This document shows, piece after piece, positions 13,246 to 61,853 of a stretch of DNA of 64,000 bases (positions are counted from its first letter, which is position 1; every line of letters starts with the position of its first letter). Source of the stretch: Vitrella brassicaformis CCMP3155 (taxonomy: Eukaryota; Protista; Chromerida); the NCBI GenBank assembly GCA_001179505.1, contig CDMY01000395.1, forward strand, positions 62,001 to 126,000. The letters run 5' to 3'. The position numbers were made by a program, and so were the translations under genes. Under the pieces are notes generated by a model. It made no database searches. It was not told the origin of the DNA and was given only the letters and a program-made list of their open reading frames with translations.

Positions 13246-15836
13246 TCACTCGGTGCTGGATGGGGATGGCGAGAAGTAGTCAGTGATCTTGCGCTGCATC
13301 GGGTCATCGACAAAACCGATGCGGCGCACCTCTACTCGACAGTCATACCCCAGTGGAGGCAGCTCGACCGCCTCATAACCTAGCGTACGTAACGCAAGGG
13401 AGAAAGTGCGGCCATGCGATTGCATGTAGCCATACGGAAGGATGCGGCATGTGTGCAATAGGTCAAAGATAAAGGAGGGGTTTTCCCCCTCCTTCCCCTT
13501 GTCATCCTTGCCCCACTCGTCACCCTCCCCGCTCATCTCACGACACTCGAGCACAATGCGGTCGAGGTGGGGCAGGCTGCGGATGGCGGCCAGACATGCA
13601 GCAGCCACATCCTCACAGTACACCCACATCTCGCCATGTACATCCACCGACAGATCGACCTCGAGAGTGATCTGTCGAACACGCTGCCTGAGCCCCTCTA
13701 TCTGCTCTGCCTGACCTGTCTGCTCCTCAAAAGTGAGGGAACACACCGACGGCGAGAAAACGCCCTTAAGGTGTAGATAAGGACCTACGCCATCACACTG
13801 AGGCACCGAGGAAGTGAACGAAGGCTCGGAGTCACCCAAAGTGAACTCAATGACCCGCAGATTGCCTAAGTTGCCCAACGCATCCATGGCCCATGCCATA
13901 GACTCCCCCGTGCGTACCACACTCATCGGCAGGACGAGGGTGGCGACACTGGGAAATGCATGGGCCGCATGAGACAGCACTCCGTGCATCACAGTCACTA
14001 TGTCGATTGCTACCAAGCGCCTTGCGCGCTCAAACAGAACGGCTTGGTCGTCGCGAGAGTCGGGCAAGAGAAGAGAGTCGGGGAAGAGGTAGGGGAATGT
14101 CGAGCCTTGCTTCCAGTAGAGTCTCAAGCTGACACTCGTCGCAGCACGGGCGAGGGCAGCGATGGAGGGGGCGTATGCGGCCATGGTATCACTCATGTAT
14201 GCGAAGACTGCGGTTGAGAATGTGAGCTCGTCGGCGGCATGGCAGCGGACGGCGGCGTTGGGCGCCAGCCAGTGGGATCGAACCCAGTGTAACTCCTGCA
14301 GCACACAACACACCAGCCAGACACGTGCGTCCGTGTGTGGTGGTTTTCCCCCCCATATCCGCTGACCGCGATGGTGGCCTTGGTGACATTCCTGCCCGTG
14401 ATGATGGCATCCAGCTCCTCCACTTGAGGCCTGCTGACGATGTCAGGCGGGAGTGGCAGTGTGGGAGTCGATCCGCCGTTGATGACGAGGCCCCGCAGTT
14501 TCTTGACGGACGGCGACAGGATGCCGGCCGCAGACACCCACGGCACTGTCCAGCCACTGTCGAGGGTCAGTGTGTGAGGGCCAGGCGACCACCGCTTCCA
14601 CGAGGCGCACATGTCTCCAATGAAGACGCTGAGAGGGAGCCGTTCGAGGTCGCCCATGTGCACCTCTTGAACCGACCTGCATGTGAAACGCTAAAAGGAG
14701 TCCGGTCGTCCTTGTCCGTCTGGCTCGCTCGAGTCCCTTGTGAGGTGCTGTCGGGTGTGCGTGTTGCTTACGTGAGGCCCCAGGAACGATGGCAGGCCAC
14801 CCTAGTCCAATCCCCACCGACTATCACTGCAACAAGGTGGCAAACAGACAAGGGTCCGTGTGCATCGCCCTCTCGCAAACAGAGCTCACCTGTTTTGAGT
14901 TTTGGGAAGATCAAAGCGCCCTCTCCCGCTTGCCATCCCTGCTGCGGGCAGTGGCTGAAGTCATCGCCGTCCACCACCAGGCTCTCCAGAGTGCCGCGTG
15001 CCCCCTCCACCGTCTCAGCGGCCCACTCCGTACCGGACACAGCATGACAGCCCGGGTCGTCTTGCTGAGTCGGGGCAGCCACGTGGCCAGCTGCCTATCT
15101 GTGGGTGCGGTGAGCTCGGTGCCGTCGAAGTGAACCGTCTGGTGCATGTCCGGGTTGACGGCGAGGGAGTGGAGTGAGGGGTGTGCGGACGACAGGCTGC
15201 CGATGATCGTCTGGGTGCCCAACAGACACGCCAGGTGGCCGAAGATGAGCGTGTCGGGCAGGGCCAGCAAAAGGGGAGGGAAGCGGGGCTGAACGAAAGG
15301 CCAACACAGACACACAGACACGCGAGATGATGTCACTCGGGTTGAGTGCTGACATCACCAACACGTCACACCTGATTGCGCAGGAAGGCCTCCATGTATT
15401 CCAGTTTCTCCTCAGCTATTGGGATGAGAAGGCCTTTCTTGGCCATTGAGTCCTCTTGGCACACCGCATCCATAACACCAAAGCAGATTCCATACTGCAC
15501 AGACGCGTGCTGAAACCACGCCGATCCACACACACACACCAAAAAAAGGTAAGGTAACGCGACGTGCGGAGGCGCAGCTCTCCATGCCATGTATACCTGG
15601 CGCTGTTCTCTGGTCAGTCCTGCTTCGTTGGCGAATGCTTTCCGATACGCCTCCAGCTGCGACAACACACACAGAGAGGACCCAGCAATCATAGAGCGGC
15701 ACCGGTGTTGTGATCTTACTCTTTGAAGTAGGTCGTCGATCCTCTGTAGTGTACGGCGATGAGCATCAGCCGCCGAGCGCAGCACGCCCATCCGCTGCAT
15801 GTCGACAGCCACCTGGTAAGGACTGTCGGCAGCCAT
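13246..15836 (-). CDS. F-box-like / LRR-like / C-terminal PIP-box family member 1 (apparent 1-nt frameshift at ~15031; possible pseudogene)
   Basis: Three phase-0 upstream exons from ATG 15836 splice into LLLALPDTLIFGHLACLLGTQTIIGSLSSAHPSLHSLA (F-box-like). Last exon ends [29 protein letters not shown]. Clear paralogue of the 18441-20601 and 60001-61853 genes. Confidence 0.7.
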
Positions 15837-16292
15837 CTCGCTAATCACGGGCTCTTTTCGGCCGCTGCTGCGGAGATCTGTGCAGAGGAGCACAGTTGTG
15901 CGCGTGCCGCCTCCCGGTGGTGCGCCGCATCGAAAAAAGAAGGCTCGGGCAACTTAGGACATTCCGTGAAAACCGCCCAGCATCCCCTCGGGGTTACAGA
16001 CACGAGTCTCGTTAAACACAATAACCAACCAACCAACCTCCCCCTCTCTCGCAAGGCTTCTCTGTTTTTCTCGGGGCGCTGAGCCACGCGCGGGGACAGC
16101 GGCCATTGAAATCTGCATCTTTGACTCTGTGTAACACGTCAACCAGCCTTTTTCACTCACTCTTCTCCGTGCTGTCCTCTGCTCATCTCGTACGCAGCTG
16201 CTGAAGGAACAGGACAACAGGTATACACTCACTCACTCACCCATCATTGCATCTGTGTTCCGTTGCCTCTCAGGTCTGGCCGATTCGTGATC

Positions 16293-17931
16293 ATGGCAAG
16301 CGACAGCGCGGCCAGTCAGGGCCGCCCCCTCACCCTCGAGGGCATCGACATGCAGCTGCCGACCGGCGCCAACGAGCTGACCAAGCGCCTCGTGCAGCGC
16401 ATCCTCCGCCGCGACATCACTGCTGCTGGCGTGGCGGATCTCATTCATGGAGGGGCCGATCCGAACGTCGGCATCACACTCAACTCCGATGGTCGATTGC
16501 ACATGAGTGTCCTCGCTCTCGCCATGGACACCGACAGCCGCACGAGTTGCACGTCCCCACTGACCGCGAGGATTGGGGAAGCGTCGGTCATTCTGCCCCT
16601 CTGGCCGACGCGGCAGCATCACGAGGAGATCATGACGGCACTGCTGGCGGGAGGGGCGCACGTCGATGGCGACCGAGGGCAAATCGTGGTGCCCATCAGG
16701 ATGGCCAAGAGCTCCCTCAACCTCACAGCGCTCAACGTGTTGCTGGCCAACAACGTGACGGTCCGCGGCCTTGGCGTGTGGCCGATCCTCTTTTGCTTTG
16801 TGTCCCCTTCCCCCCCCTCCCTCAATCAGAGGCGGAAGAGGAGTCACTGATGGTCATATCTCGGCGCCTATTGCAACACGACCCCTCCCTTGCCACCGAG
16901 AGGAGCACGGTGATGGAAGTCACCCCCTTGCACGACAGCGGCTGCCTGGGTGGGCTCTCTGAGGCGTTCGTCAACGAGTACATGGACATGCTGGTGACCC
17001 ATGGGGCCGACATCACAGCCGAAAACAACCGCGGACGTACGCCACTGGGGTGTGCAGCCGATGAAGGCGCCTACTGGCCGCTGCTGTATCTCTGTCAGCG
17101 TCTTTCTGCGGCTGACATCAACCGCCAGCTTCGTCCCGTGAGGTGGTCGGTACAGAGGACTGCTCTCAGTTTTGCTGCACAAGGGCTGCAATGGGGTATC
17201 GAGCGTGGCGATCCTCCTGAAAAGCTGAACGACGTGCAGCGATATGGCGCATCTATCGGCCTGATGCCCACCGATCTCTCAGATATCCTCCTCCAAGAGC
17301 GGTCGTTGGTGCTGGAGCAGTATGAGGCCGTCCTCAACGACCTGCCGTCCCACGTCATGGCCGCCATCAACGCCGCCCTCGAGCCTCAGCGCGACACCGC
17401 CGCCCACATCGGCTGTCTACTCCCCATGGCGCCCCACCACGACGGTGCCTACCCCAGTCCCGCCCCGTCCAATCTCTCATTCGGTCCCCAGGAGGCGACA
17501 GCCATCGCATGGAAGATGGCGCATTCCTCCACGACCCCACGGCTGCCCGGGCCATCATTGACGAGTACCTGGTCGCCGACTCCCAGCTCAAGCGCCGCGT
17601 GAGTGCTGCCGTCGACCACTTTGTCGAGCAGGCGGCGACCAGGACAGCGAGTAATGGGGAGGTGGTGGGTGCGATGGCTGATGTGGAGGGCGAGATGGTG
17701 CGGGTGCCGCTGCAGTGCTTCGCCATCAACGGCGGGCAACATGCACAGAGGCGGCTGGCTGTGCGTGAGGTGGTGCATCGGGCGAGGCTGGACGAGGCAG
17801 CCGCATACAGCCTCACGGGAGTGGTGAAGGGCTTCAACAGCCACTTGAGCGACACCGACTGCCGGTTCCAGTGGGGGCAGCTGGGCTAAGTCGACCAGTA
17901 TGGCCAATTCGTGCCGCTGGCAATCAACTGA
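16293..17931 (+). pseudogene. Ankyrin-repeat-like lineage-expanded family member, disrupted
   Basis: Collinear with the 24851-27176 gene (VPIRMAKSSLNLTALNVLL, LLQHDPSLATE, RTPLGCAA, VMAAINAALEPQRD, PLQCFAI, FQWGQLG). Needs frameshifts at ~16803-16825 (poly-C run) and ~17517, and has TAA at 17887-17889 where the paralogue has Tyr. Confidence 0.8.
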
Positions 17932-18440
17932 GAGAGAGAAAGAGAGAGAGGGAGAAGCTTCTGGCCTTGTCCAGTAGTACTGTGGATGGTGACGGGATTT
18001 CGAGTTTCGTTCGCTATCCAGTGTCAGGTTGTACTGTCCATGGTGTACAGATGCATGAGCAGTTTTAGTTCTGTATGACGGGAGACTCAAGTATGTGCAA
18101 TTAAGATGTTGTCGATCCGTCGCAAAGCAGCGTATACATGCACATGTGTTGAAGCCAACATGGATGCACTCACACAGAAAGGAGTCTCACTCGCACACCC
18201 AGATAACCACACGACAGCGGCCCCTGGTACATGGCGTCTGGATCCGTCGGCGGATCACCCACCTGCAGCTCAGCTGTCGGGATGCTGACGGGTGAGTCGC
18301 CGACCGCTTTCCCACGCACATGCACAAAAGGCACGCAGAAGACACGCGCAAGCAAGTATATCCCGCCCCTTGCAAGCCCCTCTGTACACCCTGGCCCCAC
18401 CCACTAGACACGCTCTACGTCCCCCCACCCGATATCTGTC

Positions 18441-20601
18441 TCACTGTCTAGCCACAGAGAAGTAGTCAGTGATGCGCTTCTGTGAGGGGACGGGCAGGCC
18501 CAGCCGCCGCACCTCAACACGACAATCGAACTCTACGTGTGGCAGCTCGACCATCTCAAAGCCATACTCACGCAGTAAGAGGTGAAAAGGCACTCGAAGA
18601 GCATCTGGTGGGGTGCCCGGCCGGTGCGTCAAGCACTCTTGCAGCACTCTCGCTATGTCGCCCCCTGCCTGCCCCTGCTCCCAGCCCTGATCCCCCTCCA
18701 CAGTGATGTTGACAAAAATGCTCTCCAGGCAGGACAGGTGGTGAGTCGCCCGCACACACCACCAAGCTATCTCCTGACACGACTCGAAATCCACAGAACC
18801 CTCCGTGTCGCCTTGCTCCCAGTACACCCATGTGTCTTTGGTGGCCTCGCGAGCTCGCTCAGCGAATGGCCTGTCCTTGTCTGTCTGATCCACCCTCAGC
18901 CATGTCTCGTCTTCGCTCTCTTCCGAGAACGCGATTGTGGTCTCGAGCAACACTGCCTCGAGCATCGGCAGCTGCCCTAGTACTCTCTGCACCAGCGCAT
19001 CAGACATGTCATCGACCAGCGCCTCCGCCCGTGTCACGCATGGGAAAAGATGAGGCACATGCGACAAGACAATCTCAGCCAGAGGGGGGCCGTCACTAGG
19101 CTGGCTTTCTACAGTGAGTGTGCGTGCCCGAGAGAACACCAGCGACGGGACAAGACCGTAGAGAGCGAGATGAGAGACCCCAGTGCCAGTGAGGTGAGTG
19201 CTCATGGACACCTCTGTAGGCACCGAGGCCAGTGTCTTGATTGTGCCCGCACAGCTACGAAGCACCTCGCTCGACATACCCGATGAGTCGTACAAGGACT
19301 CCAGGCGGAACCAGAAATCGCTTCTGCTCCAGTTCTCGGTGACGTTGGGGGCGAGGCACAGCTGTCGAAAATCATCCACATTCTACATGACACAGACAGA
19401 CAGACAGACACACACACGCACACGAACACACAGACACAGAGGGAGAGAGAGAGAGAGAGAGAGAGGACTGTGTCTTGATAAATGCGTTAGGGGTTGCCGC
19501 CTTGTGGATGAAGATCGTACCTCGATGTCTTGAGTCGACAAGTATTCGGGGGACAGGGCGATGTCGACCTCCTCCAGCCTGAGGTCCCGCTGAGCCAGCA
19601 GCTGTGCGCCCCCGTGGGTGAAGCACGACCTGATCTCGAGGCGCAGCACCTTCAGGGCGCTCAGGTCAGGCACAGATGTGGTGACCCGCAGAAGCTCCTG
19701 CAGTGGGAGCGTGTCGTAGGGATACGGATGGGTGCTCCAGCACCCATCATCGTCGTACTCGAACGACCGCAGGGCTGGCGCGAAGGACCGCCACCACACA
19801 CCGAAACCGATCACGGGGACCAGCAATCGGCAGTCGCGAACGCTCAATGACACGAGCGACCTGCAAAGCCGCACAATCAACAACAAGGCACACACATGAG
19901 AATCGCTGTGTTGTGTGTCATTCGCTGTCCTTGCCACCTACCGCAGTGCCCATCGCTTGCGTGGCGCCGCCTGCGCCCAGTCGCCGCCCACACGCGCCTC
20001 CTCCAGCACCGGGAACTCCACCAGAGACGCCCCTTGACGCTCTGACAGCAGCCTGGGCCTGCCGTGCCGCTCTGAATGCGAGTGGTCCATCTCGAGGTAG
20101 GTCAAAGTGTTGCTCGTGCCCTCCACCAGACTCGTGATGCTCTCCGTCACCGGGCAGAACAGCACGGCACGCTTGGTCTTGCTCAGTCGGGTGAGCCAGA
20201 CGCTGAGCTGCTGGCCGGTCAGGTGGATGGCCTTGGCGGTGTGGATGTGGACGCAGAGGTGGGTGGAGGGCTCAGCGGCGATGGTGTGGAAGGCCTTGCG
20301 GACGAGTGAGAGGGTGCCGATGATGCACTGGGTGCCCAGGAGAGGGCTGAGGAAGGTCGAGATGGTGTCGGACGGGACAGTCCACAGGGGAAGTGACGAC
20401 TGCAAAAGCAACGAAGCACCACACACAGACGATGATGTGTGGATAGCGAAGCAAATGGGCGGTGTGTGAGTCAATGCACACCTGCTGCCCATGGTTCGGT
20501 GTGTCCATGTCATCGCTATCAATCACTCGGCCATCATCATCGTCGTCAACCAACATCCCATCTACATCCTCCTGCAGGCAAACACGACAAAGCGCCGCCA
20601 T
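18441..20601 (-). CDS. F-box-like / LRR-like / C-terminal PIP-degron family member 2 (appears intact, 4 exons)
   Basis: ATG 20601 (MAALCRVC...). F-box-like [37 protein letters not shown]. LxxLxL-type segments (FPVLEEARV, LRSLVSLSV, LSALKVLRLE). Ends CRVEVRRLGLPVPSQKRITDYFSVARQ*. Confidence 0.8.
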
Positions 20602-21317
20602 GGTTGCGGTTTCTCTTTGTTGTTTGCCTCCCGCCCTCTCCCTTACCTCCTCTTGACGTGGGCAGTGTCGTTTCGCCATCAGAAGACCTCCTCAAGCCAC
20701 CGACCCGCTGATGCCCACTTATCCATCCCGCAGCCGGATCCTCTCCGTTCTTGCCACAGATGCAGTGGCCAGATCCTCCTGACGGTCATGCAGCCGGAGA
20801 TCTGCCGTCTTTTGGGATCACCCCACCTCTTTGAGCTCGCAAGTGCCTAGGGTGCTCCATGAAACCGCTGCTGCATGGAGATCTCCGGCTTGCGGTAGCC
20901 ATCCATGGGCGTGTCGGAGGTCTCATCGAGAGCCAGCTGTGGCTAAGACTGAGCGGGAACCGCCCCAAACTCTCGAGCCCCAAACTCTGGAGCGGTTGCC
21001 CTTCTCCCCCTCCGAAAGGACGACAGGATCCGGTCCACGGCCGGTCCTGCCCCAGCTCTTCTCTTCCCACAGCCCTACTGAAGTGAAGCACGGTTGTTTC
21101 TACCCTTTGCATCACGTCCTGGTGGGGGTAGTGTCCGCTCCCTGTTGCTCTGTGTTCGCCTCTCCTTCCGCTGCCAAAGGTGCGCAGAGGCCCACTCGTC
21201 CATCTCCTGTCTACCGCGTGTTCTCTTGTCCCCCGCCCTTGGCTGATGCACCAATCCCGTGTGTCTCCAGGTTGGCCCGTTGGTTGAGCGATTTGTTTTG
21301 GTTGACAACATAACATC

Positions 21318-24025: not shown

Positions 24026-24069
24026 GGGGCAGAAAAGGAGATTCTTGCGTTAGCGTGTGAGTGCTATGA

Positions 24070-24850: not shown

Positions 24851-27176
24851 TTAGTCGATGCCCAGCGACACGAAGCGGCCGGACTGGTCGATGTAGCCCA
24901 GCTGCCCCCACTGGAACCGGCAGTCGGTGTTGCCGAGGTGGCCGTTGCAGCACTTGATGATGGACCCCTCCAGACCATACACGGCTGCCTCGTCCAAACT
25001 CGCCCGATGCACCACCTCTCGCACTCCGAGGCGCCTGTGTTGGCCGTCTTCTCCCCTTTTAATGGCGAAGCACTGCAGTGGCGGCACGCACACCGTCTGC
25101 CCGCCTTGCCCGGCCCCCGTCACGCCCATCACACTCTTCAACCACCGCTGCAGCCCCCGTCCCGCCCTTTCGCCCTTGCCCCTCTCGGCCTTGCCCACCA
25201 CCTCCCGATTGGCCGCCGTCTGCCCACGTCGGCCAGCCACCATCACACCCGGCACACTCTTCAATAACCGCACCATCACACAATCCGTCGATTCGCCCTT
25301 GCCCGTCCCGCTCGTCGCCCCTCCCTCCTGCTGTTGCGCGTGCCGGGCGCCGCCCACCACCTCTCGGTTGCTGGCCGTCTTGGTGGCCGCCTGGTTGATG
25401 AAATGGTCGACCGCGGCACTCACGCGGCGCTTGAGAAGCGAGTCGGCGATGAGAAACTTGTCAATGACGGCACGGGCAGCCGACGGGTCGTGGAGGAACG
25501 AGCCGATCTTCCATGCGATGCCTGTGGCCTCACACGGGCCGAATGTGAGGTTGGACGGGGAGGGGTCGGGGTGGGCGCCATCGTGGTGGGGCGCCATGGG
25601 CAGCAGGCAGCCGATGCGGGCAGCGGTGTCGCGCTGCGGCTTGAGGGCGGCATTGATGGCAGCCATCACACGCTCCGGCAGCTCGTTCAGAATCGCCGCA
25701 TACTCCTCCAGCACCAGGGACCGCTCGTACTGCGTCTCTTGGGTGTGCGAGGGCATCAGGTCGACCGACGCGCCGTGCTGCAGCAGGGTGCGGATGCAGC
25801 GCTTGGCCTCGTTGATCATCTCACGGATGACAGGTCTCAACCTGTGGAAAATGCGGGAACGGGAGACGTCGAGCGGGCAGCGCAGGCCTTGTGCCGCCCA
25901 TGAAAGGACGGTCAGATTGACGACGCCCGCCGCGTTGCTGCCGGGCCCGTCGATGTCGGTCAAAGGGATGCGGCCGAGTAGATACGTCAGAGCTTTGTGG
26001 TTGGACGCCCAGGCCGCGCACTGGAGTGGCGTCAGAGGCTCCACACTGGCCCCCCCTCCAGCTTGCTGCTGCTGAGTCAACGACGCGCCATGCTGCACCA
26101 ACATGTCCAGGTATCTGTTGAGGAATCGCTGCGACATACTCCTGCGGCTGCAAATGCTGATCACGGTCGTGTCGCCCATGACGCCCGTGTCGGTTGCGAG
26201 GGATGGGTCGTGCTGCAGCAGGCGGGCAGAGATGTCAAACAGGGTGTCTTCGGCCTCCTCATCGGTGAGCGAACACCCTTGCATGAAGAGGAGAGGGCTG
26301 CTGGCGAGGGACGGGTGGCCGCGGACTGCCACATGGTGGCTGAGGAGCACCTCGACGGCCGTCATGTTGAGGGACTCCTTGGCCATCTTGATGGGCACAA
26401 TGGTGTGGTCGTCTCCTCCGTTGACGTTCGCCCCTGCCGAGATGAGCTCATTGAGGATGGCCGCCTGCATCTCTCGCGTCGACCACTTAGGCAGAGTGAT
26501 CGTCGAGGCGATCGCGGGCAGCGTCGCAAACTGAAGGGGGGACAAGACGCTCTTGGTGTCGGTGGCCAGCACAAGGAGGCTGACAAGTTGGGTGTAGTTG
26601 CCTGCCGGATTCATATTCTGTTCCCATGGAAACGTCAGAGTGACAATGACATTGACGTCAGCGCCGAGACGAATGAGCCGCTGAATGCCGTCGAGGCTGA
26701 TGTTGCGGAGCAAAATGCCAAGCACCAGGTCTTTAGTGGGCTGACTCGCGTCGTCGGGCAGGTGGATGCCGACGCCCTCAATGATGGCGGCGTAGGCTCT
26801 GTTGGTACTGTCGGGCGTCAGAGCCAAGAGTATGAGTGCTTCATTGAGGACAAGGGTGTCCCAGAAAATGCCGACAAGCGACACGGGCACGACGCCCCAG
26901 CACACATCTGGAAGGAAAAGCACACGAACGGAGAGAAAAGAGGAGCCGGGACTCTGTCGTCGCTCGCTGTGCCTGTGCTTGGATCGCCTGACTCGTCTTA
27001 CAAAGGAGTATGACGATGATTAGTCGGGTATTGGCGGCAATGATGCCAGCGACACTGAGAGCGGGGACGATGGCATGACGAACACTGACAACGACACACG
27101 CGAGGAGGCGTATGACGTTAAGTAGACCGAGAGCTACCAGAGCCCCAACGCAGAGAGTGTCCATCACCAGGTCCAT
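24851..27176 (-). CDS. Ankyrin-repeat-like lineage-expanded family member with a hydrophobic (TM-like) N-terminus
   Basis: Exon 1 from ATG 27176 (MDLVMDTLCVGALVALGLLNVIRLL...IIVILL) is phase-compatible with a 690-codon uninterrupted exon. That exon contains LIRLGADVNV, LISAGANVNGG, TPLQCAA, LLQHGASVDLMP and ends FQWGQLGYIDQSGRFVSLGID*. Confidence 0.8.
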
Positions 27177-35089: not shown

Positions 35090-38000
35090 CTATCGAGCTG
35101 CCTCCTTCCCTCTCCTGGTCTGCTGGCGGCCCCCGCCACTGCTCAGCACATTGGTGAAGCGGCGTGACACCACCAGCACCAGCACCGTGAGCAGCAGCTC
35201 CACTACTGGGAAGTTCTCGAATATGTTGATGGGGCAGGGCGTCAGCTCCGACGGGTCGGTGTTGACGTTGATGCCGTCAGCTATCGTGGGCTTGGTGAGC
35301 TGCGGCCACCCCTGGCCCTCCCGCAGCTCCTCTAAGTCCTCCTTCCTGACCTCATGCAAGTAAATGGCGGGGTTGGTCCGGTTCCACCACTCGTGGGTCC
35401 GCCAACGGTCCTGAAAGAAAGACATGCACACACCAATTCGACAGCGGCGTGTGTGTGTGTGTGTGTATCTGTGTGTGTGTATCTGTGTGTGTGTGTGTGT
35501 GTGTGTGAATTGGCTGACCGTGAACTCATAGTTCCACTTGAGAATGCGGAGGGCCGCGGGCAGTCTCTCTGTGTGCTCGATCACGCCCACTTTCCCCTCA
35601 GACGCTTTGGGCCCACCCAGCAGCCCTACAAGCTGCTTCCACAGTCCCATGACGAGCGGCAGCATGTGCTGCTGGTGCGTGTTGGCGGGGTGCTCTTTGG
35701 GCAGGAAAGGGTTGCTCTTCAGAAGGCGCGAGGCGTGTGGGTCGTTGTGCAGCAGCTTGTAGACCAAATGGACCAGCCAGCCATTCTCCTGGTAGCGGCC
35801 CAGCGAAGCGAACCACATCTGCCAGTCGAGTCGCGGCTGGTGCGGCTGGGCGATTGCCGGCCGGGTGTCCTCCCTCCCCGGCTTATAAGCAAACTCATAC
35901 TCCAACCATTGCTGACACAGAGAGAGAGAGAGGGACATTATTGTGGACGGATGGATGGATGTGTGTGTGAGTCTGACTGACTGACTGACCCGCCGCTCTG
36001 GATCGTATCCTTCGATGGTGAGCTCTGGCCGCCCGCCCACACCCGTCATCCTGCGGAACAGACCGTAGCTCGCAGTCAGCTGGAACGGAGCTGAAAACAA
36101 CACAACCACACATACATACAGACAGACTCTGACCATCTCACTCACGAATGAGGTGCAAATGCTGTCTGTGCGCACCAGTGCGTCTGTGCAGCCCGGTGGT
36201 GAGGAGCTCTGGTGGGTGGAGGAAGTAGAGGGCGGGTTTGCTCAGGTCGCGGCCCCGTCGCTGCGTGCCGTGGACCGACGGGACCTCCATCTCCAGCCCC
36301 TGGTAGAAGGGCATCATGCTGCACACACACACACACACACAACCGGCCGCACACACACCATCGCGGGAGGGAGCTGTGGCATCAATCAGTTGTGACTGAC
36401 CTGTTCAGGAAGAGTGCGATTGCAGCCGTGCACACGAACAGGGCCCACGAGACGGTCCCAACCGACGCCCATCTGCTAATGCGCCGCCTGCATTCGGGAT
36501 GGCACAACGACACACAGACTGTGCGGTTGGTTGGCGTCTGTCAAGATAGCAATCTCTCTGGCCTACTGAGCTAGTTCCTCTCTCTGATGGACAGTAAGCC
36601 ATATGAGGCCCACGGCGCCACCCACAATCATCACCCACACTGACCACACACACACACACACACACAGAGGGCAGCAATGCCAGACACAATGGAGCCCTGT
36701 TTGTTTGAGTCTTTCCTTCTCACGTTGGGTGAGTGTGAGCGTCGGCACCACCAGAACCACAAACCGTCTCAGGTCATCGATATTGAATCTCAGCCGCCCC
36801 TGAGCGACATGGTCCAGCGGGAAGAGCACCAGGAACCCGCCCATCACAGCCAGCGCCACCAACACATACGTGCCGACCTCAAGCACCTCCGGTCGCCGCC
36901 AGAACGGCTTGATGGGCCAGGTCTCGTTGTCATCATTCTCATGTGCCTCGTCCGCTCGTGTGGTGGCCGTCCGGCTGTCGCCATTCATCGCCGCTGCCTT
37001 CTTGCCTCTCTTGGATGAGGGTGGTTTGTGAGGCGACGTGGTGGCGGGGGTCGAGGGGCTTGGTGAGGGTGGTGAGGTGATCGGGCAGCCCCAGAGGGAG
37101 AGAAGCTCCTTCGGCACGACACACGACAGGATGGCCTTGTCGTCGAGGCAATTCAGGCACCTGACACGAGAATGCATTCAATGGCTGCAGGACTGTGCGG
37201 GGTGTGGTGTTGTGTGTGTGCTCATTTCGTACATGACACATGCGAGAAGGTTGAAGAAGTTGTAGGAGCCTGTGGCCGCAATCAGCACCATCAGCGCCAC
37301 TTGGAAGAAGACCGCCACGTGCCGCGCGACGCGCCACGGTGAAAAGAGGAGGATCGACACGCAGATCTGGATGTAGAATGTGCCCGCCACGCCCATCTTC
37401 AGGAAGAATCCCGGCAGCTTGTGGGCGAACCAAGAGGTGGGCATGGGGAGGCACTGGGACTGGAAGTGCCACTGCAGCGCCGTCAGCGACCACCACGTCG
37501 GACACCCACTGACACACACGTAACACACACGTCAAGGCTCCATCCATCCATTCTCGTCTCGTGTGTGTCTGTCCACCTGTAGAGTTTGGTGATGCCCGAG
37601 GCGAACATGAGCCGAAACAGCAGCCACCTCACCAGCCACCGGACCACTCGGTGATGCACCGGCTCCCTCAGCGACGTGTCTGTCCGACCGTAGTCGGTGC
37701 CGCCCGGGCTGATGATCAATTTCTTGAGAAGCCCCAAGGGACAGTCGCCATAGAGGATGGCTATCGCGCCTGAGGGGAGCAAAGAAGAGGTCTTTCTTGA
37801 GTGAGATGGATGGATGAGTGATCCTGACGTACGTAGCTCACGCACGCACCGGTCTCTATCAGGAGTATGTCCCACTGGAAGTGCATGAATGTCTGGCCCA
37901 CCGACAGCATCGACAGGTACCCCGCATACAGCACAAACAGCACCGCGCTGTTGGACGTCACGTTGAGAGCTACACACAGGGAGAGCAGGACGCCCATCAG

Positions 38001-49083: not shown

Positions 49084-49115
<32 letters not shown>

Positions 49116-50362: not shown

Positions 50363-50396
<34 letters not shown>

Positions 50397-51211: not shown

Positions 51212-51280
51212 GGACAGACAGACAGACAGACAGACAGACAGCTCATGTGCGAGCGAGTGGATGGATGGATGGATGGACGA
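51212..51280. repeat. Intergenic (GACA)n and (GGAT)n microsatellites
   Basis: GACA run followed by a GGAT run, read directly. Confidence 0.85.
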
Positions 51281-52078
51281 CTCTTGTGTGCATTGATGGA
51301 GCAGCCAGCGACGTACGGTGTCTTTTTGCCTCTCGTTCGTGTGGCGAGTTCTTTCTTGTCGACTTGACCGAGCAATCTGCAGGTGGGGCTGTGGTGTAGC
51401 GTGGTATGCATGCGTGACCTCGTGTGTGTTGTTTCTGCGGGGATCTTGCGACGGACGGACGCTTCCTGACCTGCGGTGCGGTGCGTGGGTTGCAATGCAG
51501 TTGGTGTCGTGCAGCATAGCATGTGGATGGACGCATGCGGGCCATCCATCCATCCATCTCACACACGTGAACAAGCAAGCCATGGCGGACCAACGCACGT
51601 GTATGTGGGCGGGGCTGGGGGGTCAGTGTGTGTCTCTATCTATCTGTCTACTTCTTGCTGAGCTGTGCTGATCTGTGGCAGACGGGATGGAGTGCAGTGC
51701 CTAGTGGATGGATCCGTGTCAGTCTGCGCGTGACACTCTCAGTCTGCACACTTGACTGATCGACATTCACAGGTCTCACCAAGCCCGCAGATCCTTCACA
51801 CAGCATGAAACACACGCACCTGCGGGTCAGCTGTTGTCTTGTGGCGTCAATATCGTCCTGTGTTTGACTCACTGGTCTGGGTGGGGCTGTGTTTGTCTTT
51901 CACGTCCATTTCGAATAAGAGAAAGGCCGGAGGCCCAAGGCAGCTCAGCACGCTTTGTGGACGCCTCCAGGCGCGGAAAAGAGAGAGATCTGAACACGCT
52001 CTCATTGAAAGATCAACGCCAAGGCGAGCTAAGAACACGAATTCAGGATGTTGTCGTGACAGATCTAACTGTTGCGGG

Positions 52079-53445: not shown

Positions 53446-53873
53446 AGTGATTGGTTGCTGAGAGGGTGATTGATAGATAGGGCGTTGCTGTCTTGTGTTT
53501 GGAGTGGTGGTCTGTCTGCTTGTGTGTATAGGGTAGGCCTTCCATCGTCATGGGTGGCCGGGGCCTTGTACATTCCTCTTGTTTCTTCGAATGAGGGAGA
53601 CACAGAGTCGGTATTTGTGCGACCAGATGCACTCGTTGACAGACAGGGGACATGTCCTCTAGCTATTGCGGTCAATGAGTCGGTCATTCACCGATGGCAC
53701 CTGGCCACCCAATCTCTTACTTACACACACACATCCGATCAACCACGCCAAGCCAGGACATGCACGCCACACGCCATCACTTAACGAGGGCCTCCTTCAA
53801 CACGCCCATCCTGCCCGCAGCCACACACAGACACACACGCCATTGACACAAATCATTGCGTTGAATGAGGCCG

Positions 53874-56726: not shown

Positions 56727-57008
56727 TCTCTCCCCCTATGTGATCTTACTTGAAGCCCCTAGGCGCAGGGTGCTTAGGAGGATACATCAGGGTTTGCGCG
56801 AGGAGAAACTGCCCCCAAAAGCTCGCCCCGTCTCAGCTCGCAAACACGAATTTGGATCTGGCGCAGGCCCTCCCTCTTTCCGCACTGTGACGCCTGGGCC
56901 ATTGCTCATCTCAGTCAAGACCAGCTCTTGGTCAGGGTTGCGGCAGCTGGTGCGTGTTGTTCTTGTGGCTTGGACCAGGTGTGAGCCTTGCTGAGTCCTC
57001 TGGTGAGG

Positions 57009-57359
57009 ATGAAGGGAGGGCCGGATCAGCAGCCGACGGCAGGCGCCTCGTCCTCTTCCGATGGGCGCGGTGAGGAGGCTGCTCTGCTCGTGAGACGGAT
57101 CAAGGTGGGCAGTGACGCACACCACACCGGATCACGGTTGCTGGATGTGGTGTGTTTTCGTCCCTTGTGTGTACACAGGCGCTCGATCCGAAGAGCTACG
57201 AGCAGCTGAGGACAGCGCTAGAGAATTATGTGGGCGGTGGGGAACCTTGGGATGAGACCTGGCGGACGGTGATACAGATCATGGAGGGGCACCCGTCGCT
57301 GTGGAAAAACAGCTTCATCTTCATGAGTGACGTCGCCGATGTAAGCATACACACAAACA

Positions 57360-57394
<35 letters not shown>

Positions 57395-59216
57395 GGAGCC
57401 TGCTCACACACAGCACACCCGCGTCTGTCATCTCTGTGTGTGGTGTGTGGTTCTCAGCGCATCAGAGCACTGTCCGCTGATATGGAGAGAGATACAGAGA
57501 AACTACAGGTCTGTATGGTATGGTGAAGGAAGAGTACATGAGGGATGGATTGACACCTTTCTGTTCTGCGTCTGCTTGTCCTTGTCCTTGTCAGACGCCG
57601 GCCTACTCGCGGGTGCCGCTCAGCGAAATCAACTGGGACGGTGAGGGGGGGAACCAAGATCATCCTATGTGTGTGGACCACCACCATGTGCACATTCTCT
57701 GTGTGTGTGTGTGATGTCAGGTGCCGAGGTGTCTGGCTCCAGCTATCGCAAGCTCCCTGCAAACTACCCCAAGAAGGTCTGCAACCAACATAGAACTGCA
57801 CACACCCCCACACGCGCACACTGTGCCTTCTCCACTGTGCGGCGCTGCTCTGGTCGTGACGAGCTGTGTAGAAAGGTCCTCAACAACACGTGGACATCCA
57901 TCTCGCAGGCACGCACCTACACCGGCATACACACACGTTCACACACTTCTACTCTCGCGTGTTGGTGTGGTGTGATGGTTCCTTTCTCCAGGGCAGTGAG
58001 CGCGCGATACGCGCCAGCGGTCGCGACAAGGCGCTCTTCCAGACGGAGGACGAGCGCTTCGAAGTCGACTACAAGATCGAACTCGGGAACACAAGTCAGC
58101 TGCCATGCATCCACGACACAGACAAATCGTGTGTTCATTGGTGTGTGTTCCTGGGGAGGGGTCTTTGCTGTTCATTGCAGCCATCGACGTGCTCAACAGG
58201 ACCATTGACCGCGCGCGGGCACAGCAGCACCCAAAGCACACGTGAGGCCCTGAATCAGCGGCAGGCAACACGCGCATGGCAGCCCCACATCTCATCTGTC
58301 TTGCCGCCTCTACGCAGCATTGGCCCCGTTGCTGCGAGCGTGTTGGCGCCCGAGCTGCTGTGGCACCCGATTCATCGCAAGTGCCTGCGGCTCATATACG
58401 GCCGACATCTGGCCAGAGAGGTCGTTGAGCTCATCAAGACAGACATCAACAGTGAGCAGGGCGCCACAGTGAGGGTCGGTGGAAGGGGCACGGTGCAGGT
58501 GTTTCTCTCTCTCCCTCTTTCAGGTTGTGTGCCGCTAATCGTTGGACATCTGAAGCGCAAAGTCAAGGCATGGTGAGGACACACCGACGGCAAAATGGAG
58601 TGTGTTGGCAGCAGAGGTGTATGTGTGTGTGTATGTGTGCAGGGAGCTGCTGCGGACGCAGCACAATCGTGGTGTGTGGCACAACAAGATGAAGAAAAGC
58701 TACGAGAAATCCCTCGCACACCAGCGCACACAGGACGACACTTCGCTGCAGCAGGTATACAAGTGCAGACACAACAGATGACGAAAGATGGATGGATGGA
58801 TGGATGTGTATGTGCCCTTTGTCGCCCCTGTGGTGGGTCCACCAGGTGTCCCAAGCACCCGGCACGGCTTCAAAGAAGCGTCAGGCACAGGTGCGTGGAT
58901 TCCCCCTGGCCTGACCACGCCTTCCTGTCTGCCTGCCTGCCTGCCTGCCCGTCTGTCTGTCTGTCTGCAGGATGGCAATTCTGCGGCAAAGCGGCCCCGC
59001 ACAGAGCCACAGATCGAGCAGGAGGCGGCTGGGCTTTCACAAGAGCAGGACCGAGAGAAAACTTCCGGTGTTGCTGCTGCGAGCGCTGCAAGTGCTGCCG
59101 TCACTGCTCAAATGAAGAGTGATGGCGGGCAGGGTCGGCAGCACGTGATTGGTGGGGCTGATGTGCGTGAGGAGGACATGTCTGCCCAGACGAGCCCCTC
59201 GGGTGCAGCGTCGTGA
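57009..59216 (+). CDS. SIN3: Minimal Sin3-like co-repressor (one PAH domain plus the HDAC-interaction domain)
   Basis: PAH-like exon YEQLRTALENY...VIQIMEGHPSLWKNSFIFM. HID motifs GSSYRKLPANYP, CSGRDELCRKVLNNTWTS, LFQTEDERFEVD, IHRKCLRLIYG, PLIVGHLKRKVKAW, KSYEKSLAHQ. Confidence 0.85.
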
Positions 59217-60000
59217 CCCACGGTTGACTGTCTATGTAGTATATGCATTACGGGGTGCTCACTCTCTGTTTGCGGGCCGGCCTGTGTACAGCGTGACGCG
59301 TTTATGCGTACATACATACATACATACACTTACGCATTCATCCCTCTCTGGTACCGATCCCTCTCTGTCTGTCTGTCTGTCTGTCTGTCTGCACACGGGA
59401 AGGCTGATTGTACATACGCACCTAGCTACCTTGGTTTGCTCTGTGTCGTCTTGTCCTGTGTGTCTGTCTCAATCCACCTCTGCCGTGCTGCATTGGTCTC
59501 CTTCGCCGCCGTTTCTCGAAGGCTGTAGAGCACTCGAGGGCTGGGAAGGACACTAACGTGGCACACAGACATGCGCGAGGGCACTCCGGATGCTGGGCTA
59601 AGTGATGGGCTATTGTGCAGCCGGTGTAACTGCGTTGCTTACTGTGTGACTGTGAGAGGGATGGCGTGTGAGTGTGGGTGGGACAGGCGTCTGCTGCTGT
59701 CGATGCAACACGCCAGACGTGCAGCCGATATGCAAGTCGGGCATGCATCTCCGTCAGCAGATCTTTGTCTCACCTTAACTCACGTGTATGTCTATACGAT
59801 GCCGTGACTGACAGATTGCCGCTTACTGTGCGTGACTTCAATGAACAAACGAGTGCTGTACACCGAGCAAGACACTCATTCACTCATGGAAGATGTGTCC
59901 ACCGGTCCACACATTCACACACACACGGTTGGTGTCTCACTCAGCACGCAACATTGCGATATCAACATGACACCCACACCCATCCCCTTGCCCCTCTCAC

Positions 60001-61853
60001 TCACTGCACAGCAGAGAAGTAGTCAGTGATCTTGCGCTGCATCGGGTCACCGACAAAACTGATGCGGCGCACCTCCACGCGACACAGATGGCCCAATGGG
60101 GTCAGTTCCACGAGGTCAAAACCGGCCGCCCGCAGCAGCGCATGAAAACGGCCGCCGTCCAGCTGAACTTGCTCAAACGCGCTCAGGAAGTGGCTGTCTT
60201 CCTCCCTCCCCTGTCCCCAGCAGCGATCCACCTCAAGCACGATGCTATTCAGACACGGCACTGAAGATGTGGCAAGGATGCACTGACTGGCGACAGTCTG
60301 ACTGAACTCCTCTGCCCCCGCCCAGCCTCCCTCATCATAGCTCGGCAGCTCAGACAGCTCGATGGTATAGGCCATGCGAGATATGCGCTCATGGAACGGC
60401 CTGCCTCCCTCTCCTGCCTCATCCACCAACAGCGACCACTTCCCCAACCCCTCCTCAACGTCGACATAACACCTGACGACCGTGAGGTTGCCCAGCTGCT
60501 CTAGCACTGGCTGCACGTCTCCCTCAACCAGGCTGGCCAGCCCTTCCCCCTCGAATGCGAAAAGGTCTGCCTCTGTGACGTGGGGAAACATATGACCGAT
60601 ACGCGACAGAAAGGCAGCCGGCAGAGGGAAGAGATTCTGCCGGACCTCAAAGTAGAGGCTCAGCGAAGAGACTCGGGGAAGATTGAGTTTGGACACGACA
60701 GAATAGAGTTGAGGCGAGAAGTTAGGGGCGCACCTTCATGGACGTCGTAGAATTGATCAACAGGCGGCGCGTCGTCATGTCAAACGCATCGAGCCTCAGG
60801 CCGCACTCGCTGAGCCGCTGTGCGTCCCACCGCCCCATGTCGAAGCTGCCGTTGCTGATGACCGTCAGGTGCTTCAGGCTGCTCAAATCGACTCCAGCGG
60901 GCATGTCGCGGCCCCAGTGCGGGCCAGCAGGATGGTCCAGCTCGAGTGTGTGTAGCGCTCGACTGAACTGGTGCCAGCGGTGGCAGCAACTCGTGGACGA
61001 TGAAACGCGCAGTGACTCAAGCGAGCTGCAGAGGAGGAACACACACAGGCAGACACACAGAGAGTGTTGCATTTACCATCCTGTTGGCCCTGGTTGGGTT
61101 GTAAGGATAATACCTGAGCACCCAGTCTCCGTCGCCAGCCACCCGCACCCAGCGACCGGCGACCACCACATGGGTCAGCATGGAGAAGGTGGGCCTCCCG
61201 AAACGACGCACAGCCCCACCCCCACCCCCCCTGGTCTCGCTGTCATCCGCCTCCAAATGCGTCAACGTCTTGTGCGTGGCCTCAATCACACGGGCAAGGC
61301 TCTCATTCAACGGACACAGCATGGTGACGCGATTCGTGAGGGTGAAGCGAGGGCACCACACATCGAGCTGGCCGTCAGTGAGACGAATCTTCTCATGTGC
61401 GCGGGTCTTCGGACGGACGGTGCTCTTGAGGAAGATGGTGCGATGCATCTGTGGGTCGGTGGCGATGGTGTGGAGAGCCTTGCGGACGAGTGAGAGGGAG
61501 CCGATGATGCACTGTGTGCCAAGGAGGGGGCTGAGGAAGGCCGTGCGGACGTCATCGGGGATGCTCGACAGAGAGAGTGAGTCAATAAGCTGATGACAAG
61601 CAAATCAAAATCGAACAATGAATGAAAGATGGACGATACGCAGTCAGGTGCGTGCGCGTGTGGTGTACAGTACCTCCTTGGTATGTGATTCATCTGCGGG
61701 TCGGGTATCGAGTGATCCAACAGCGCTGCCGCTTACGATCTCAACCTAATGAATCAAACACATTGCATTCATTGAGCTCGGTCACGGTGATGCACTGCCT
61801 CCTTCCCTCACCTCTTTGCTTGTCGGCTGTTTTTTGTTTGAGGCGGCCATCAT
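60001..61853 (-). CDS. F-box-like / LRR-like / C-terminal PIP-box family member 3
   Basis: Two short phase-0 exons from ATG 61853 lead to [37 protein letters not shown]. Intron positions match members 1 and 2. Ends [27 protein letters not shown]. The last acceptor (~60634-60650) is ambiguous. Confidence 0.75.

What the first reader, a model, noticed from the sequence alone, without database searches (positions are those of the whole stretch)
13246..61853. Dispersed gene family: F-box-like + LRR-like + C-terminal PCNA-interacting (PIP) box, a candidate set of replication-fork-targeted SCF adaptors
Seen: three paralogues (13246-15836, 18441-20601, 60001-61853, all minus strand) share intron positions and an N-terminal motif like L..(L/V/I)P.D.....L..LLGTQ.IIG.LS.(V/A)......A. 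Their central LxxLxL-rich region is highly diverged, but all three end in CRVEVRR-x7-Q(RK/KR)ITDYFS within 3-8 residues of the stop (PIP coordinates 13273-13296, 18459-18482, 60016-60039). Established: Q-x-x-[ILM]-x-x-[FY]-[FY] is the canonical PIP box, often C-terminal (e.g. Pol delta p66, RNase H2B), and F-box domains bind Skp1 in SCF ligases. Inference: a lineage-expanded family of SCF substrate receptors docked on PCNA, with variable substrate-binding bodies and an invariant clamp tether. I know of no described expanded family with this architecture.
Basis: partly seen in the sequence, partly recalled or inferred. Interest (0 to 1): 0.88.

Follow-up and report, generated by a model that had tools for sequence, protein, structure and literature searches.

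The report
Vitrella F-box/LRR family with PIP tails
The alga Vitrella brassicaformis has a family, seen in no other organism so far, of very divergent F-box/leucine-rich-repeat proteins, one branch of which ends in a strictly conserved motif with the form of a high-affinity sliding-clamp (PCNA) binding site; these may be ubiquitin-ligase adaptors parked on the replication clamp, but no binding has been tested and two of the three copies in this window look damaged.

Summary
Three minus-strand paralogues share an N-terminal LP-type motif and a tail, Q[RK][RK]ITDYFS, at exactly the coordinates given.

The window is Vitrella brassicaformis CCMP3155, and gene B is the annotated 620-aa protein P0002.

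An exhaustive profile search finds 46 relatives. All 25 that I looked up are Vitrella proteins.

No Pfam F-box or LRR model reaches threshold. F-box-like (PF12937) is the only recurrent sub-threshold hit, best E 0.0029. An AlphaFold model (pLDDT 80) shows three N-terminal helices followed by an alpha/beta solenoid. Foldseek on PDB and Swiss-Prot, and ESM-Atlas searches of the whole protein and of residues 44-95 alone, return almost only F-box proteins.

The tail occurs in 18 of 52 sequences, 3-17 residues from the C-terminus. Q1, I4, T5, D6 and F8 are invariant despite synonymous codon changes and long branches, so it is selected at the protein level. It maps to one part of the family tree.

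The basic +4 residue of a PIP degron is present only in gene B.

Gene A carries a 1-nt frameshift between the F-box and the body. Gene C lacks 63 codons, and a transcript contig runs unspliced through the break.

Skp1 and PCNA binding remain inference. I rate this a new variant of known kinds (Cdt2, FBH1). Other first-reader notes of this scan report PIP-tailed F-box sets elsewhere in this genome.

The parts
18441..20679 (-). Gene B, intact, 5 exons (20679-20647, 20571-20482, 20399-19941, 19859-19521, 19382-18441). It equals P0002, 620 aa, an unnamed protein of Vitrella brassicaformis CCMP3155.
   Evidence: Exact mapping of P0002 onto the window; database hit.
20268..20387 (-). Gene B F-box-like three-helix region (P0002 residues about 46-85: [40 protein letters not shown]).
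   Evidence: AF2 helices 51-62, 65-74 and 76-83. ESM-Atlas search of residues 44-95 alone returns F-box clusters by features (top score 0.90) and in all 10 structure rows (TM by query 0.54-0.62). F-box/LRR chains align from their F-box onward.
18483..20267 (-). Gene B body (introns included): about 17 irregular beta/alpha units, an LRR-type solenoid that ends in the strand CRVEVRR.
   Evidence: DSSP of the model. Foldseek top hits are COI1, D3, TIR1 and FBXL2; 30 of 30 Swiss-Prot hits are F-box/LRR. No Pfam LRR hit.
18459..18482 (-). Gene B tail motif QKRITDYF, followed by SVARQ-stop. It is a canonical TD-type PIP box with R at +4, the full PIP-degron pattern.
   Evidence: Direct reading. The pattern definitions come from PMC3973308. 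The motif lies after the last strand in a low-confidence, exposed segment.
13246..15836 (-). Gene A, 7 exons by homology. The reading frame is broken between the motif exon and the body. The public model (P0017) covers only 14657-13249.
   Evidence: The upstream exons are homologous to paralogue fragments P0030 and P0032.
15154..15273 (-). Gene A F-box-like motif (LLLALPDTLIFGHLACLLGTQTIIGSLSSAHPSLHSLAVNP).
   Evidence: Alignment A4; a family N-terminal HMM finds this domain in 39 of the 52 family sequences; gene A's own segment aligns with it in A4.
15031..15033 (-). Gene A 1-nt deletion (frameshift) after ..AVMLCP(V). The next conserved residues, TEWAAETVEG, are in another frame, and the stop comes 44 codons later.
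   Evidence: Paralogues read ..LLPLTEWAVKTVE.. in one frame. DNA contigs of runs X1, X2 and X3 cross the site with no difference.
14296..14366 (-). Gene A last intron (71 nt, GT..AG), confirmed spliced in RNA. The 3' part of A (13200-14625) is transcribed.
   Evidence: RNA-run contig X11 record 9 skips 71 nt here.
13273..13296 (-). Gene A tail motif QRKITDYF, followed by SPSPSSTE-stop. TD-type PIP box with no basic residue downstream.
60001..61853 (-). Gene C, 5 exons by homology. It has an internal loss of 63 codons relative to P0007 and a frame break.
61443..61577 (-). Gene C F-box-like motif ([45 protein letters not shown]).
   Evidence: Sub-threshold Pfam F-box-like hit: E 0.099, 12.9 bits, profile positions 2-46 of 47. 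Alignment A4.
60729..60734 (-). Gene C break. Exon 4 ends ..INSTTSMK and reads on to VRP-stop. Homology to P0007 resumes in another frame at [10 protein letters not shown].
   Evidence: tblastn against P0007; enumeration of possible introns; transcript contig L043 is colinear and unspliced here.
60016..60039 (-). Gene C tail motif QRKITDYF, followed by SAVQ-stop.

Best explanation
These are members of a gene family found so far only in Vitrella brassicaformis. It has at least about 40 genes and the gain-and-loss pattern typical of expanded F-box families.

The proteins are extremely divergent F-box/LRR proteins. An N-terminal three-helix F-box-like unit (LP[DE]...LLGTQ.IIG.LS...H) is followed by about 17 irregular leucine-rich beta/alpha repeats. 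The repeats end in a conserved last strand (C)RVEVRR.

In one part of the family tree (at least 10 full-length genes plus fragments, including A, B and C), the last strand is followed after 7-8 residues by an exposed C-terminal peptide, Q-[RK]-x-I-T-D-[YF]-F. This peptide is kept by purifying selection at the protein level and has the form of a high-affinity, TD-type PCNA-interacting (PIP) box.

The inferred mechanism has three steps. The F-box recruits Skp1/Cul1. The variable LRR body selects substrates. The tail docks the ligase on DNA-loaded PCNA, so that substrates on or near the clamp are ubiquitylated. This is the logic shown for the C-terminal PIP box of Cdt2 in CRL4.

Shown here: the family, the fold class, the conservation of the motif and its exposed position. 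Inferred: Skp1 binding, PCNA binding and the direction of regulation.

In this window only gene B is clearly intact. A and C look like recently damaged copies.
For: Family and range:
- The profile search of 1.84 billion representatives gives 46 proteins at E<=1e-3.
- All 25 that I looked up are V. brassicaformis.

Fold:
- The AF2 model of P0002 has pLDDT 80.3 and pTM 0.76, with helices 51-83 followed by a beta/alpha solenoid.
- Foldseek PDB top hits are COI1, D3, TIR1 and FBXL2, with E down to 8e-7.
- All 30 top Swiss-Prot AFDB hits are F-box/LRR proteins aligned from their residues 1-25.
- VIA-align top hits are FBXL17 (Z 10.8), KDM2B, FBXL2, Skp2 and KDM2A, each aligned from its F-box onward.
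- ESM-Atlas returns only F-box clusters for the whole protein (score 0.95 by features; all 10 structure rows).
- For residues 44-95 alone the Atlas also returns F-box clusters, including F-box/WD40 and other non-LRR architectures.
- PF12937 F-box-like is the only Pfam family hit by more than one of 28 N-terminal segments. Each hit spans essentially the whole 47-position profile (E 0.0029, 0.099, 0.11).

Tail:
- 18 of 52 sequences carry Q[RK]xITD[YF]F 3-17 residues from the end. Q1, I4, T5, D6 and F8 are invariant, position 7 is Y or F, and positions 2-3 vary.
- Distant members use different codons (ACT/ACG/ACC, GAC/GAT, TTC/TTT) and have diverged flanks.
- On a tree built without the last 30 residues, the tail-bearing proteins cluster: 2 changes against 8.5 for shuffled labels, and one origin is not excluded. 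Terminal branches exceed 1 change per site.
- The motif follows the last strand (594-600) in a low-confidence segment.

Precedents:
- The C-terminal PIP box of Cdt2 docks a CRL receptor on PCNA (PMC6312923).

Expression:
- Spliced transcript contigs exist for paralogues (L001, L042) and for the 3' part of A.
Against: - No Pfam F-box or LRR model reaches its gathering score in any of 38 members.
- Profiles of the N-terminal domain and of the whole family do not find F-box proteins among PDB sequences. The best hit is a TBCE LRR at E 0.011, with TIR1 at E 1.2.
- The N-terminal fragment modelled alone gives no significant Foldseek hit. In the wide VIA search the best Z is only 4.4, for FBXL5.
- Plain LRR proteins (CD14, TLR8) score nearly as high as F-box/LRR proteins in VIA on the full model.
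- The F-box helices have only moderate confidence (pLDDT 55-70), and the usual Trp of helix 3 is missing.
- Skp1 and PCNA binding are untested.
- Two thirds of the wider family lack the tail.
- The linker between the last strand and the motif is short (7-8 residues).
- A and C are probably non-functional as full-length proteins.
Confidence: 0.45

Rival explanations
1. The tail is a PIP degron rather than a tether. The proteins bind DNA-loaded PCNA and are themselves ubiquitylated there by CRL4-Cdt2 and destroyed in S phase or after damage, as shown for the F-box helicase FBH1. The family would then be a set of F-box proteins switched off during replication.
For: TD at positions 5-6 is invariant. 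The TD motif is rare in ordinary PIP boxes and typical of CRL4-Cdt2 substrates (PMC3973308). Gene B has the complete pattern with R at +4. FBH1 is an F-box protein regulated in this way (PMC3711418). Many members have a basic residue somewhere between +1 and +5.
Against: The defining basic residue at +4 is present in only 1 of 18 tails; A-like and C-like tails have no basic residue downstream. Three tails stop after +3 and seven more after +4, so ten of the 18 have no residue at +5. Whether Vitrella has a Cdt2 orthologue was not checked here.
Confidence: 0.2
2. The tail is a conserved short linear motif for a partner other than PCNA, or a structural or C-terminal stability element. Its match to the PIP pattern would then be a coincidence of form.
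For: PIP-like motifs are short and known to be promiscuous (my own knowledge of the field). There is no binding test. The language-model search of the tail alone gave nothing pointing to PCNA partners (scores <=0.60). AF2 draws a short helix over ITDYFSVAR that could pack on the body.
Against: The invariant positions are exactly the PIP-defining ones (Q1, aliphatic 4, aromatic 7-8) plus TD, while positions 2-3 and the flanks vary. The position is terminal and of low confidence, as in Cdt2, p21 and FEN1-type PIP boxes.
Confidence: 0.2
3. The N-terminal helices are no longer, or never were, a working F-box. The proteins would be LRR scaffolds, possibly PCNA-bound, with no link to SCF ubiquitin ligases.
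For: All sequence-model tests are below threshold or negative. The domain-only structure search is not significant. The conserved GT(Q/K).I(I/V)G and H..LH signature is not part of the usual F-box consensus.
Against: Residues 44-95 alone retrieve F-box clusters of several architectures, by features and by structure. The sub-threshold Pfam alignments cover the whole F-box-like profile in register. The L-P start and the spacing of hydrophobic residues match an F-box when read directly.
Confidence: 0.12

Closest known systems
Cdt2 (DTL), substrate receptor of CRL4, with a C-terminal PIP box (PMC6312923)
   Same: A cullin-RING substrate receptor carries a PIP box at its extreme C-terminus, which places the ligase on DNA-loaded PCNA next to its substrates. 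This is the mechanism proposed here.
   Different: Cdt2 is a WD40 DCAF that works with CUL4-DDB1, not an F-box/LRR protein. It is a single gene, not an expanded family. Its motif (MRKICTYF) is non-canonical at position 1 and lacks TD.
FBH1 (FBXO18), an F-box DNA helicase with PIP and APIM motifs (PMC3711418)
   Same: An F-box protein that binds PCNA through a PIP-type motif with TD. It shows that F-box and PIP can coexist in one protein.
   Different: The body of FBH1 is a UvrD-type helicase, not LRR. Its PIP acts as a degron for CRL4-Cdt2. It is a single conserved gene.
FBXL-type F-box/LRR receptors (Skp2, FBXL2/3/5/17, KDM2A/B) and plant TIR1/COI1/D3
   Same: These are the best structural matches to the P0002 model: an N-terminal F-box followed directly by an LRR solenoid.
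   Different: Sequence identity is only 9-14%. No Pfam F-box or LRR model reaches threshold. The repeats are irregular. None of these proteins is known to me to end in a PIP box.
Lineage-specific F-box expansions (plant F-box/FBD/LRR genes, nematode F-box genes)
   Same: Large, fast-diverging families confined to one lineage, with frequent pseudogenes. The top Swiss-Prot structure hits are Arabidopsis F-box/FBD/LRR proteins.
   Different: Those families have no conserved C-terminal clamp-binding motif. This family was found only in a chromerid alga.
PIP degrons of Cdt1, p21 and Set8 (PMC3973308)
   Same: The Q/N-x-x-aliphatic-T-D-aromatic-aromatic core is identical in form, and basic residues at positions 2-3 are also common there.
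   Different: The degron-defining basic residue at +4 is conserved in those substrates, but it is present in only one of 18 family tails (gene B).

Membership tests
F-box (Pfam PF00646 / PF12937) | Match to the family HMM at or above the curated gathering score | tested here: not met
   There is no hit at E<=0.01 in 38 full-length members. On N-terminal segments the best is PF12937 at 17.8 bits (cut-off 24.3), E 0.0029, for P0007. Gene C scores 12.9 bits (E 0.099). Genes A and B have no hit.
F-box (Pfam PF00646 / PF12937) | Three-helix F-box fold of about 40-50 residues at the N-terminal side of the substrate-binding domain | tested here: met
   AF2 places helices at 51-62, 65-74 and 76-83, directly before the solenoid. 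F-box/LRR chains align from their F-box start. Residues 44-95 alone match F-box clusters of LRR, WD40 and other architectures, with TM by query 0.54-0.62. Caveat: pLDDT is 55-70 in this part, and the domain-only Foldseek search was not significant.
F-box (Pfam PF00646 / PF12937) | Leu-Pro start and conserved hydrophobic positions of helices 1-3 | tested here: inconclusive
   L(x)LP[DE] and the hydrophobic spacing are conserved in 28 aligned segments. The sub-threshold Pfam alignments span profile positions 2-47 of 47. The usual Trp of helix 3 is replaced, and a family-specific GTQ.IIG signature is present.
F-box (Pfam PF00646 / PF12937) | Binding to Skp1 | not testable with these tools
   Neither complex modelling nor an experiment was available.
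Leucine-rich repeat (RNI/FBXL-type) domain | Match to LRR HMMs | tested here: not met
   There are no LRR families at E<=10 on exon translations or at E<=0.01 on 38 members. The family profile against PDB sequences gives a TBCE LRR at E 0.011 and TIR1 at E 1.2 only.
Leucine-rich repeat (RNI/FBXL-type) domain | Curved solenoid of repeated beta-strand/helix units | tested here: met
   About 17 beta/alpha units span residues 90-600 of the model, mostly at pLDDT 85-97. The top structural matches are LRR solenoids.
PIP box (PCNA-interacting peptide) | Q-x-x-[ILMV]-x-x-[FY]-[FY] | tested here: met
   QRKITDYF (A, C) and QKRITDYF (B). 18 of 52 family sequences carry the motif, with Q1, I4 and F8 invariant and Y or F at position 7.
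PIP box (PCNA-interacting peptide) | Located in an exposed, flexible segment (often a terminus) | tested here: met
   The motif lies 3-17 residues from the C-terminus and 7-8 residues after the last strand. pLDDT falls to 70 and then 47.
PIP box (PCNA-interacting peptide) | Direct, motif-dependent binding to PCNA | not testable with these tools
   No complex prediction or assay was available. Vitrella PCNA was not retrieved.
PIP degron (CRL4-Cdt2 substrates) | T-D at positions 5-6 of the PIP box | tested here: met
   Invariant in all 18 tails. Definition from PMC3973308.
PIP degron (CRL4-Cdt2 substrates) | Basic residue four positions downstream of the PIP box | tested here: not met
   Only gene B (SVAR) has it. 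A (SPSP), C (SAVQ) and 15 other tails do not, and three tails end before +4.

The most novel reading that the evidence does not exclude
Vitrella has evolved a whole radiation of SCF substrate receptors that use the sliding clamp PCNA as a shared docking platform. Each paralogue would bring a different LRR substrate-binding surface to replication or repair sites, so that a family of E3 adaptors, not a single one such as Cdt2, remodels the clamp-associated proteome. The family turns over fast, with fresh pseudogenes such as A and C. This would fit an arms race, for example with mobile elements or viruses that replicate through host PCNA.
Probability: 0.25. Interest if true: 0.8.

Novelty: new variant of a known kind. 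Interest (0 to 1): 0.6.

Why it matters
CRL receptors that dock on PCNA are known only as single genes (Cdt2, and FBH1 as a substrate). A lineage-specific, diversifying family of F-box/LRR proteins with an invariant high-affinity-type PIP tail would mean that clamp-coupled ubiquitylation can be multiplied and retargeted by gene duplication. It would also give a set of natural variable-body, constant-tether proteins with which to study what is ubiquitylated at forks in an alveolate close to the apicomplexan parasites.

The case also shows that F-box domains too divergent for Pfam thresholds can be recovered by structure and language-model searches. This bears on the many uncharacterised proteins of chromerids.

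Tried and rejected
1. Pfam on all exon translations at E<=10 and on 38 members at E<=0.01 gave nothing usable.
2. A profile of the N-terminal domain and a profile of the whole family were searched against PDB sequences. Neither found an F-box protein.
3. The N-terminal 111 residues were modelled alone. Foldseek on PDB gave no hit at E<=0.001. The wide VIA search gave FBXL5 on top, but at Z 4.4, which is below significance.
4. I scanned metagenome contigs for the tail's DNA (CAG-N6-ATCACTGACTACTTC), hoping to find other Vitrella architectures with the same tail. The collection holds no Vitrella DNA. The 34 loci are unrelated, and 20 of them end in a different repeated C-terminus, KQSNITDYFK-stop. 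ORFs upstream of these gave no telling Pfam hit.
5. The ESM-Atlas search of the tail alone was uninformative, with scores <=0.60.
6. I considered that the tail's identical 17-mer reflects a DNA-level repeat or gene conversion. I rejected this as the general explanation because distant members keep the peptide with different codons. Recent duplication or conversion does explain the near-identical 3' ends, UTR included, of C/P0007 and of B/P0001.
7. I considered an assembly error for the frameshift in A. Three runs' DNA contigs agree, although they may come from the same strain.
8. A proteome-wide count of C-terminal Q..[ILM]TD[FY][FY] could not be done, because the Vitrella proteome is not searchable by pattern with these tools.
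9. Neighbouring genes (ankyrin-repeat genes, an LMF1-like gene) are unrelated and give no contextual clue.

Full report
**What is in the sequence**

The window has about 59% G+C and short GT-AG introns. I translated the three regions and defined exons by homology.

All three minus-strand loci encode related proteins. Each has an N-terminal motif of the form LxxLP(D/S)D...LLGTQ.IIG.LS...H, a diverged middle part, and the ending CRVEVRR-x7-Q(RK/KR)ITDYFS.

The 17-mer ATCACTGACTACTTCTC occurs at 13271-13287, 18457-18473 and 60014-60030 and nowhere else, even with three mismatches allowed. The expected number is 0.13. A tblastn of all family proteins against the window finds only these three loci.

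**Identity of the genome and of gene B**

A protein search with a paralogue returned P0002 (620 aa), an unnamed protein product of Vitrella brassicaformis CCMP3155. P0002 maps exactly onto gene B as five exons from 20679 to 18444. B is therefore an intact, annotated gene.

**State of genes A and C**

*Gene A.* The motif exon reads ..RAVMLCPV. The next conserved residues (TEWAAETVEG.., matching ..LLPLTEWAVKTVE.. of paralogue fragments P0030 and P0032) are in a different frame, so one base is missing at about 15031-15033. Without repair the frame stops 44 codons later.

DNA contigs of three sequencing runs cross the site without any difference. The public model P0017 begins only at Met 14657 and so lacks the N-terminal domain. 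The only rescue is a hypothetical 50-nt GT-AG intron (15033-14984), which would remove 17 conserved residues.

An RNA-run contig shows that the 3' part (13200-14625) is transcribed and that the last intron (14296-14366) is spliced. It gives no information on the 5' part.

*Gene C.* Compared with its close paralogue P0007 (67-72% identity in the flanking exons), C lacks P0007 residues 282-344. Homology jumps from one frame to another at 60734/60729, and read straight through the protein ends ..TTSMKVRP-stop.

The conserved donor at 60733 could be joined in frame to new acceptors at 60646 or 60637. However, a metatranscriptome contig (L043, 1090 nt) is 100% colinear with the genome from 60967 to 59878, with no splice there.

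A and C therefore look like recently damaged copies. Both keep an open tail-encoding exon.

**The family**

A profile of five B-like proteins was searched against 1.84 billion representative proteins. It found 46 proteins at E<=1e-3, and 11 at E<=1e-30. Every one of the 25 whose source I looked up is from V. brassicaformis, either genome annotation or MMETSP/JGI transcripts.

A local HMM of the N-terminal region finds that domain in 39 of the 52 sequences gathered.

I built a maximum-likelihood tree of 30 full-length members with the last 30 residues removed. It shows three groups:
- a clade of 11 with an LPEALW-type N-terminus and Lys-rich C-termini;
- a clade of 8 without the tail;
- a set of lineages that carry the tail: a clade of 7 that includes B, P0007, P0009 and P0012, plus P0011/P0025 and P0010.

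The tail label needs two changes on this tree, against 8.5 for shuffled labels. A single origin is not excluded.

**Is it an F-box/LRR protein?**

Sequence models say no, or not quite:
- There is no Pfam family at E<=10 on the exon translations.
- There is none at E<=0.01 in 38 members.
- Profiles against PDB sequences find no F-box protein.
- When 28 N-terminal segments were scanned at E<=10, the only family hit more than once was PF12937 F-box-like. The hits were P0007 (E 0.0029, 17.8 bits, cut-off 24.3), gene C (E 0.099) and P0003 (E 0.11). Each aligns across positions 2-47 of the 47-position profile.

Structure says yes:
- AlphaFold2 with the 49-sequence family alignment gives pLDDT 80.3 and pTM 0.76. 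It shows three helices (51-62, 65-74, 76-83) followed by about 17 beta/alpha units up to the strand 594-600 (CRVEVRR).
- Foldseek against PDB ranks COI1, D3, TIR1 and FBXL2 first, with E down to 8e-7.
- Against Swiss-Prot models, all 30 top hits are F-box/LRR proteins aligned from their first residues.
- VIA-align ranks FBXL17 (Z 10.8), KDM2B, FBXL2, Skp2 and KDM2A at the top, each starting at its F-box. Plain LRR proteins reach Z 8.8-9.4, so Z alone does not discriminate.
- The ESM-Atlas search returns only F-box clusters for the whole protein.
- Decisively for the N-terminus, the Atlas also returns F-box clusters for residues 44-95 alone. These include F-box/WD40 and other non-LRR architectures, with TM by query 0.54-0.62.

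The N-terminal fragment modelled on its own was inconclusive: Foldseek found nothing significant, and the best Z in the wide VIA search was 4.4, for FBXL5.

I put the F-box/LRR reading at about 0.85. The family fails the formal HMM membership test.

**The tail**

Eighteen of the 52 sequences carry Q[RK]xITD[YF]F 3-17 residues before the stop. Q1, I4, T5, D6 and F8 are invariant. Position 7 is Y (16 sequences) or F (2). Position 2 is always basic, and position 3 is R, K, P or L.

I fetched the genomic or transcript DNA of eight further members. The peptide is kept with different codons (ACT/ACG/ACC, GAC/GAT, TTC/TTT, TAC/TTC) and with diverged flanks. The constraint therefore acts on the protein, not on a DNA repeat.

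Very recent duplicates (C with P0007, and B with P0001) are nearly identical through the 3' UTR.

The preceding CRVEVRR is the last structural strand. It is conserved, as VEMRP or VEVRR, even in tail-less clades that continue with Lys-rich ends. The PIP-like peptide is thus an addition specific to one part of the family.

[quoted passage not shown] The degron-defining basic residue at +4 is present only in gene B. This agrees with a separate first-reader note on this window.

**Mechanism and rivals**

The best-supported reading is a divergent SCF-type receptor with a clamp-docking tail. This parallels the C-terminal PIP box of Cdt2, which places CRL4 on PCNA beside its substrates (PMC6312923).

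The main rival is that the tail makes these proteins targets of PCNA-coupled destruction, as for the F-box helicase FBH1 (PMC3711418). Both could be true at once.

Two weaker rivals remain. The motif might bind a partner other than PCNA, or the N-terminal helices might not bind Skp1. These tools can test none of the binding steps.

**Novelty**

I found no paper that describes this family. F-box/LRR proteins, PIP boxes, a PIP-docked CRL receptor and a PIP-bearing F-box protein are all known. A lineage-restricted, diversifying F-box/LRR family with an invariant TD-type PIP tail is, to my knowledge, new as a combination. I rate it a new variant of a known kind.

Other first-reader notes of this scan report similar PIP-tailed F-box sets elsewhere in this genome, one of them with kelch repeats. 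I could not check those.

Noticed in passing
L003, L005, L010, L011, L014, L016, L018, L020, L021, L023, L025, L028, L029, L031-L033, L035 (contigs JAAUYM01...), and L022: The tail's DNA pattern also hit 20 contigs of one metagenome assembly (JAAUYM01, G+C 43-59%). In these contigs short terminal exons end in ..SLKQSNITDYFK-stop. This is a different repeated gene or element of another, probably animal, organism, and it too ends in a TD-type PIP-like motif. L022 ends ..QKRITDYFQ-stop.
   Followed up: partly
window 13271-13306 and 15100-15132: In the assemblies of three runs, the contig graph breaks at these two short stretches, which have 2-3.5 times the neighbouring word depth. This marks sequence shared exactly with paralogues elsewhere in the genome (the tail, and part of the N-terminal exon).
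   Followed up: no
window 13200-15900 (runs X12-X16): Marine sediment metagenome runs of 2023-2025 hold up to a third of the sampled 31-mers of this stretch. Vitrella or a very close relative therefore occurs in those sediments.
   Followed up: no
window 19383-19520 (gene B intron) and other introns: Introns carry (CT)n, (TG)n and (TCTG)n microsatellites near the acceptor side. Another first-reader note on this window also records this.
   Followed up: no
P0006 (JGI transcript-derived, 552 aa): P0006 is identical to gene B's protein over about the first 210 residues, then diverges towards another paralogue, and it lacks the tail. It is probably a chimeric transcript assembly between paralogues, or an allele or recombinant.
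   Followed up: no
L001 and L042 (JGI metatranscriptome 3300017148): Each transcript contig with an intron-less family ORF also carries a second, convergent gene (a lipin-like gene and a UCH protease gene). This suggests overlapping 3' ends or chimeric assembly.
   Followed up: no
window 16247-17599 (+), 24854-26923 (-), 35093-36175 (-): The neighbouring ORFs are unrelated to the family. Two have weak ankyrin-repeat matches and one has a lipase-maturation-factor C-terminal domain (E 3.5e-31).
   Followed up: partly
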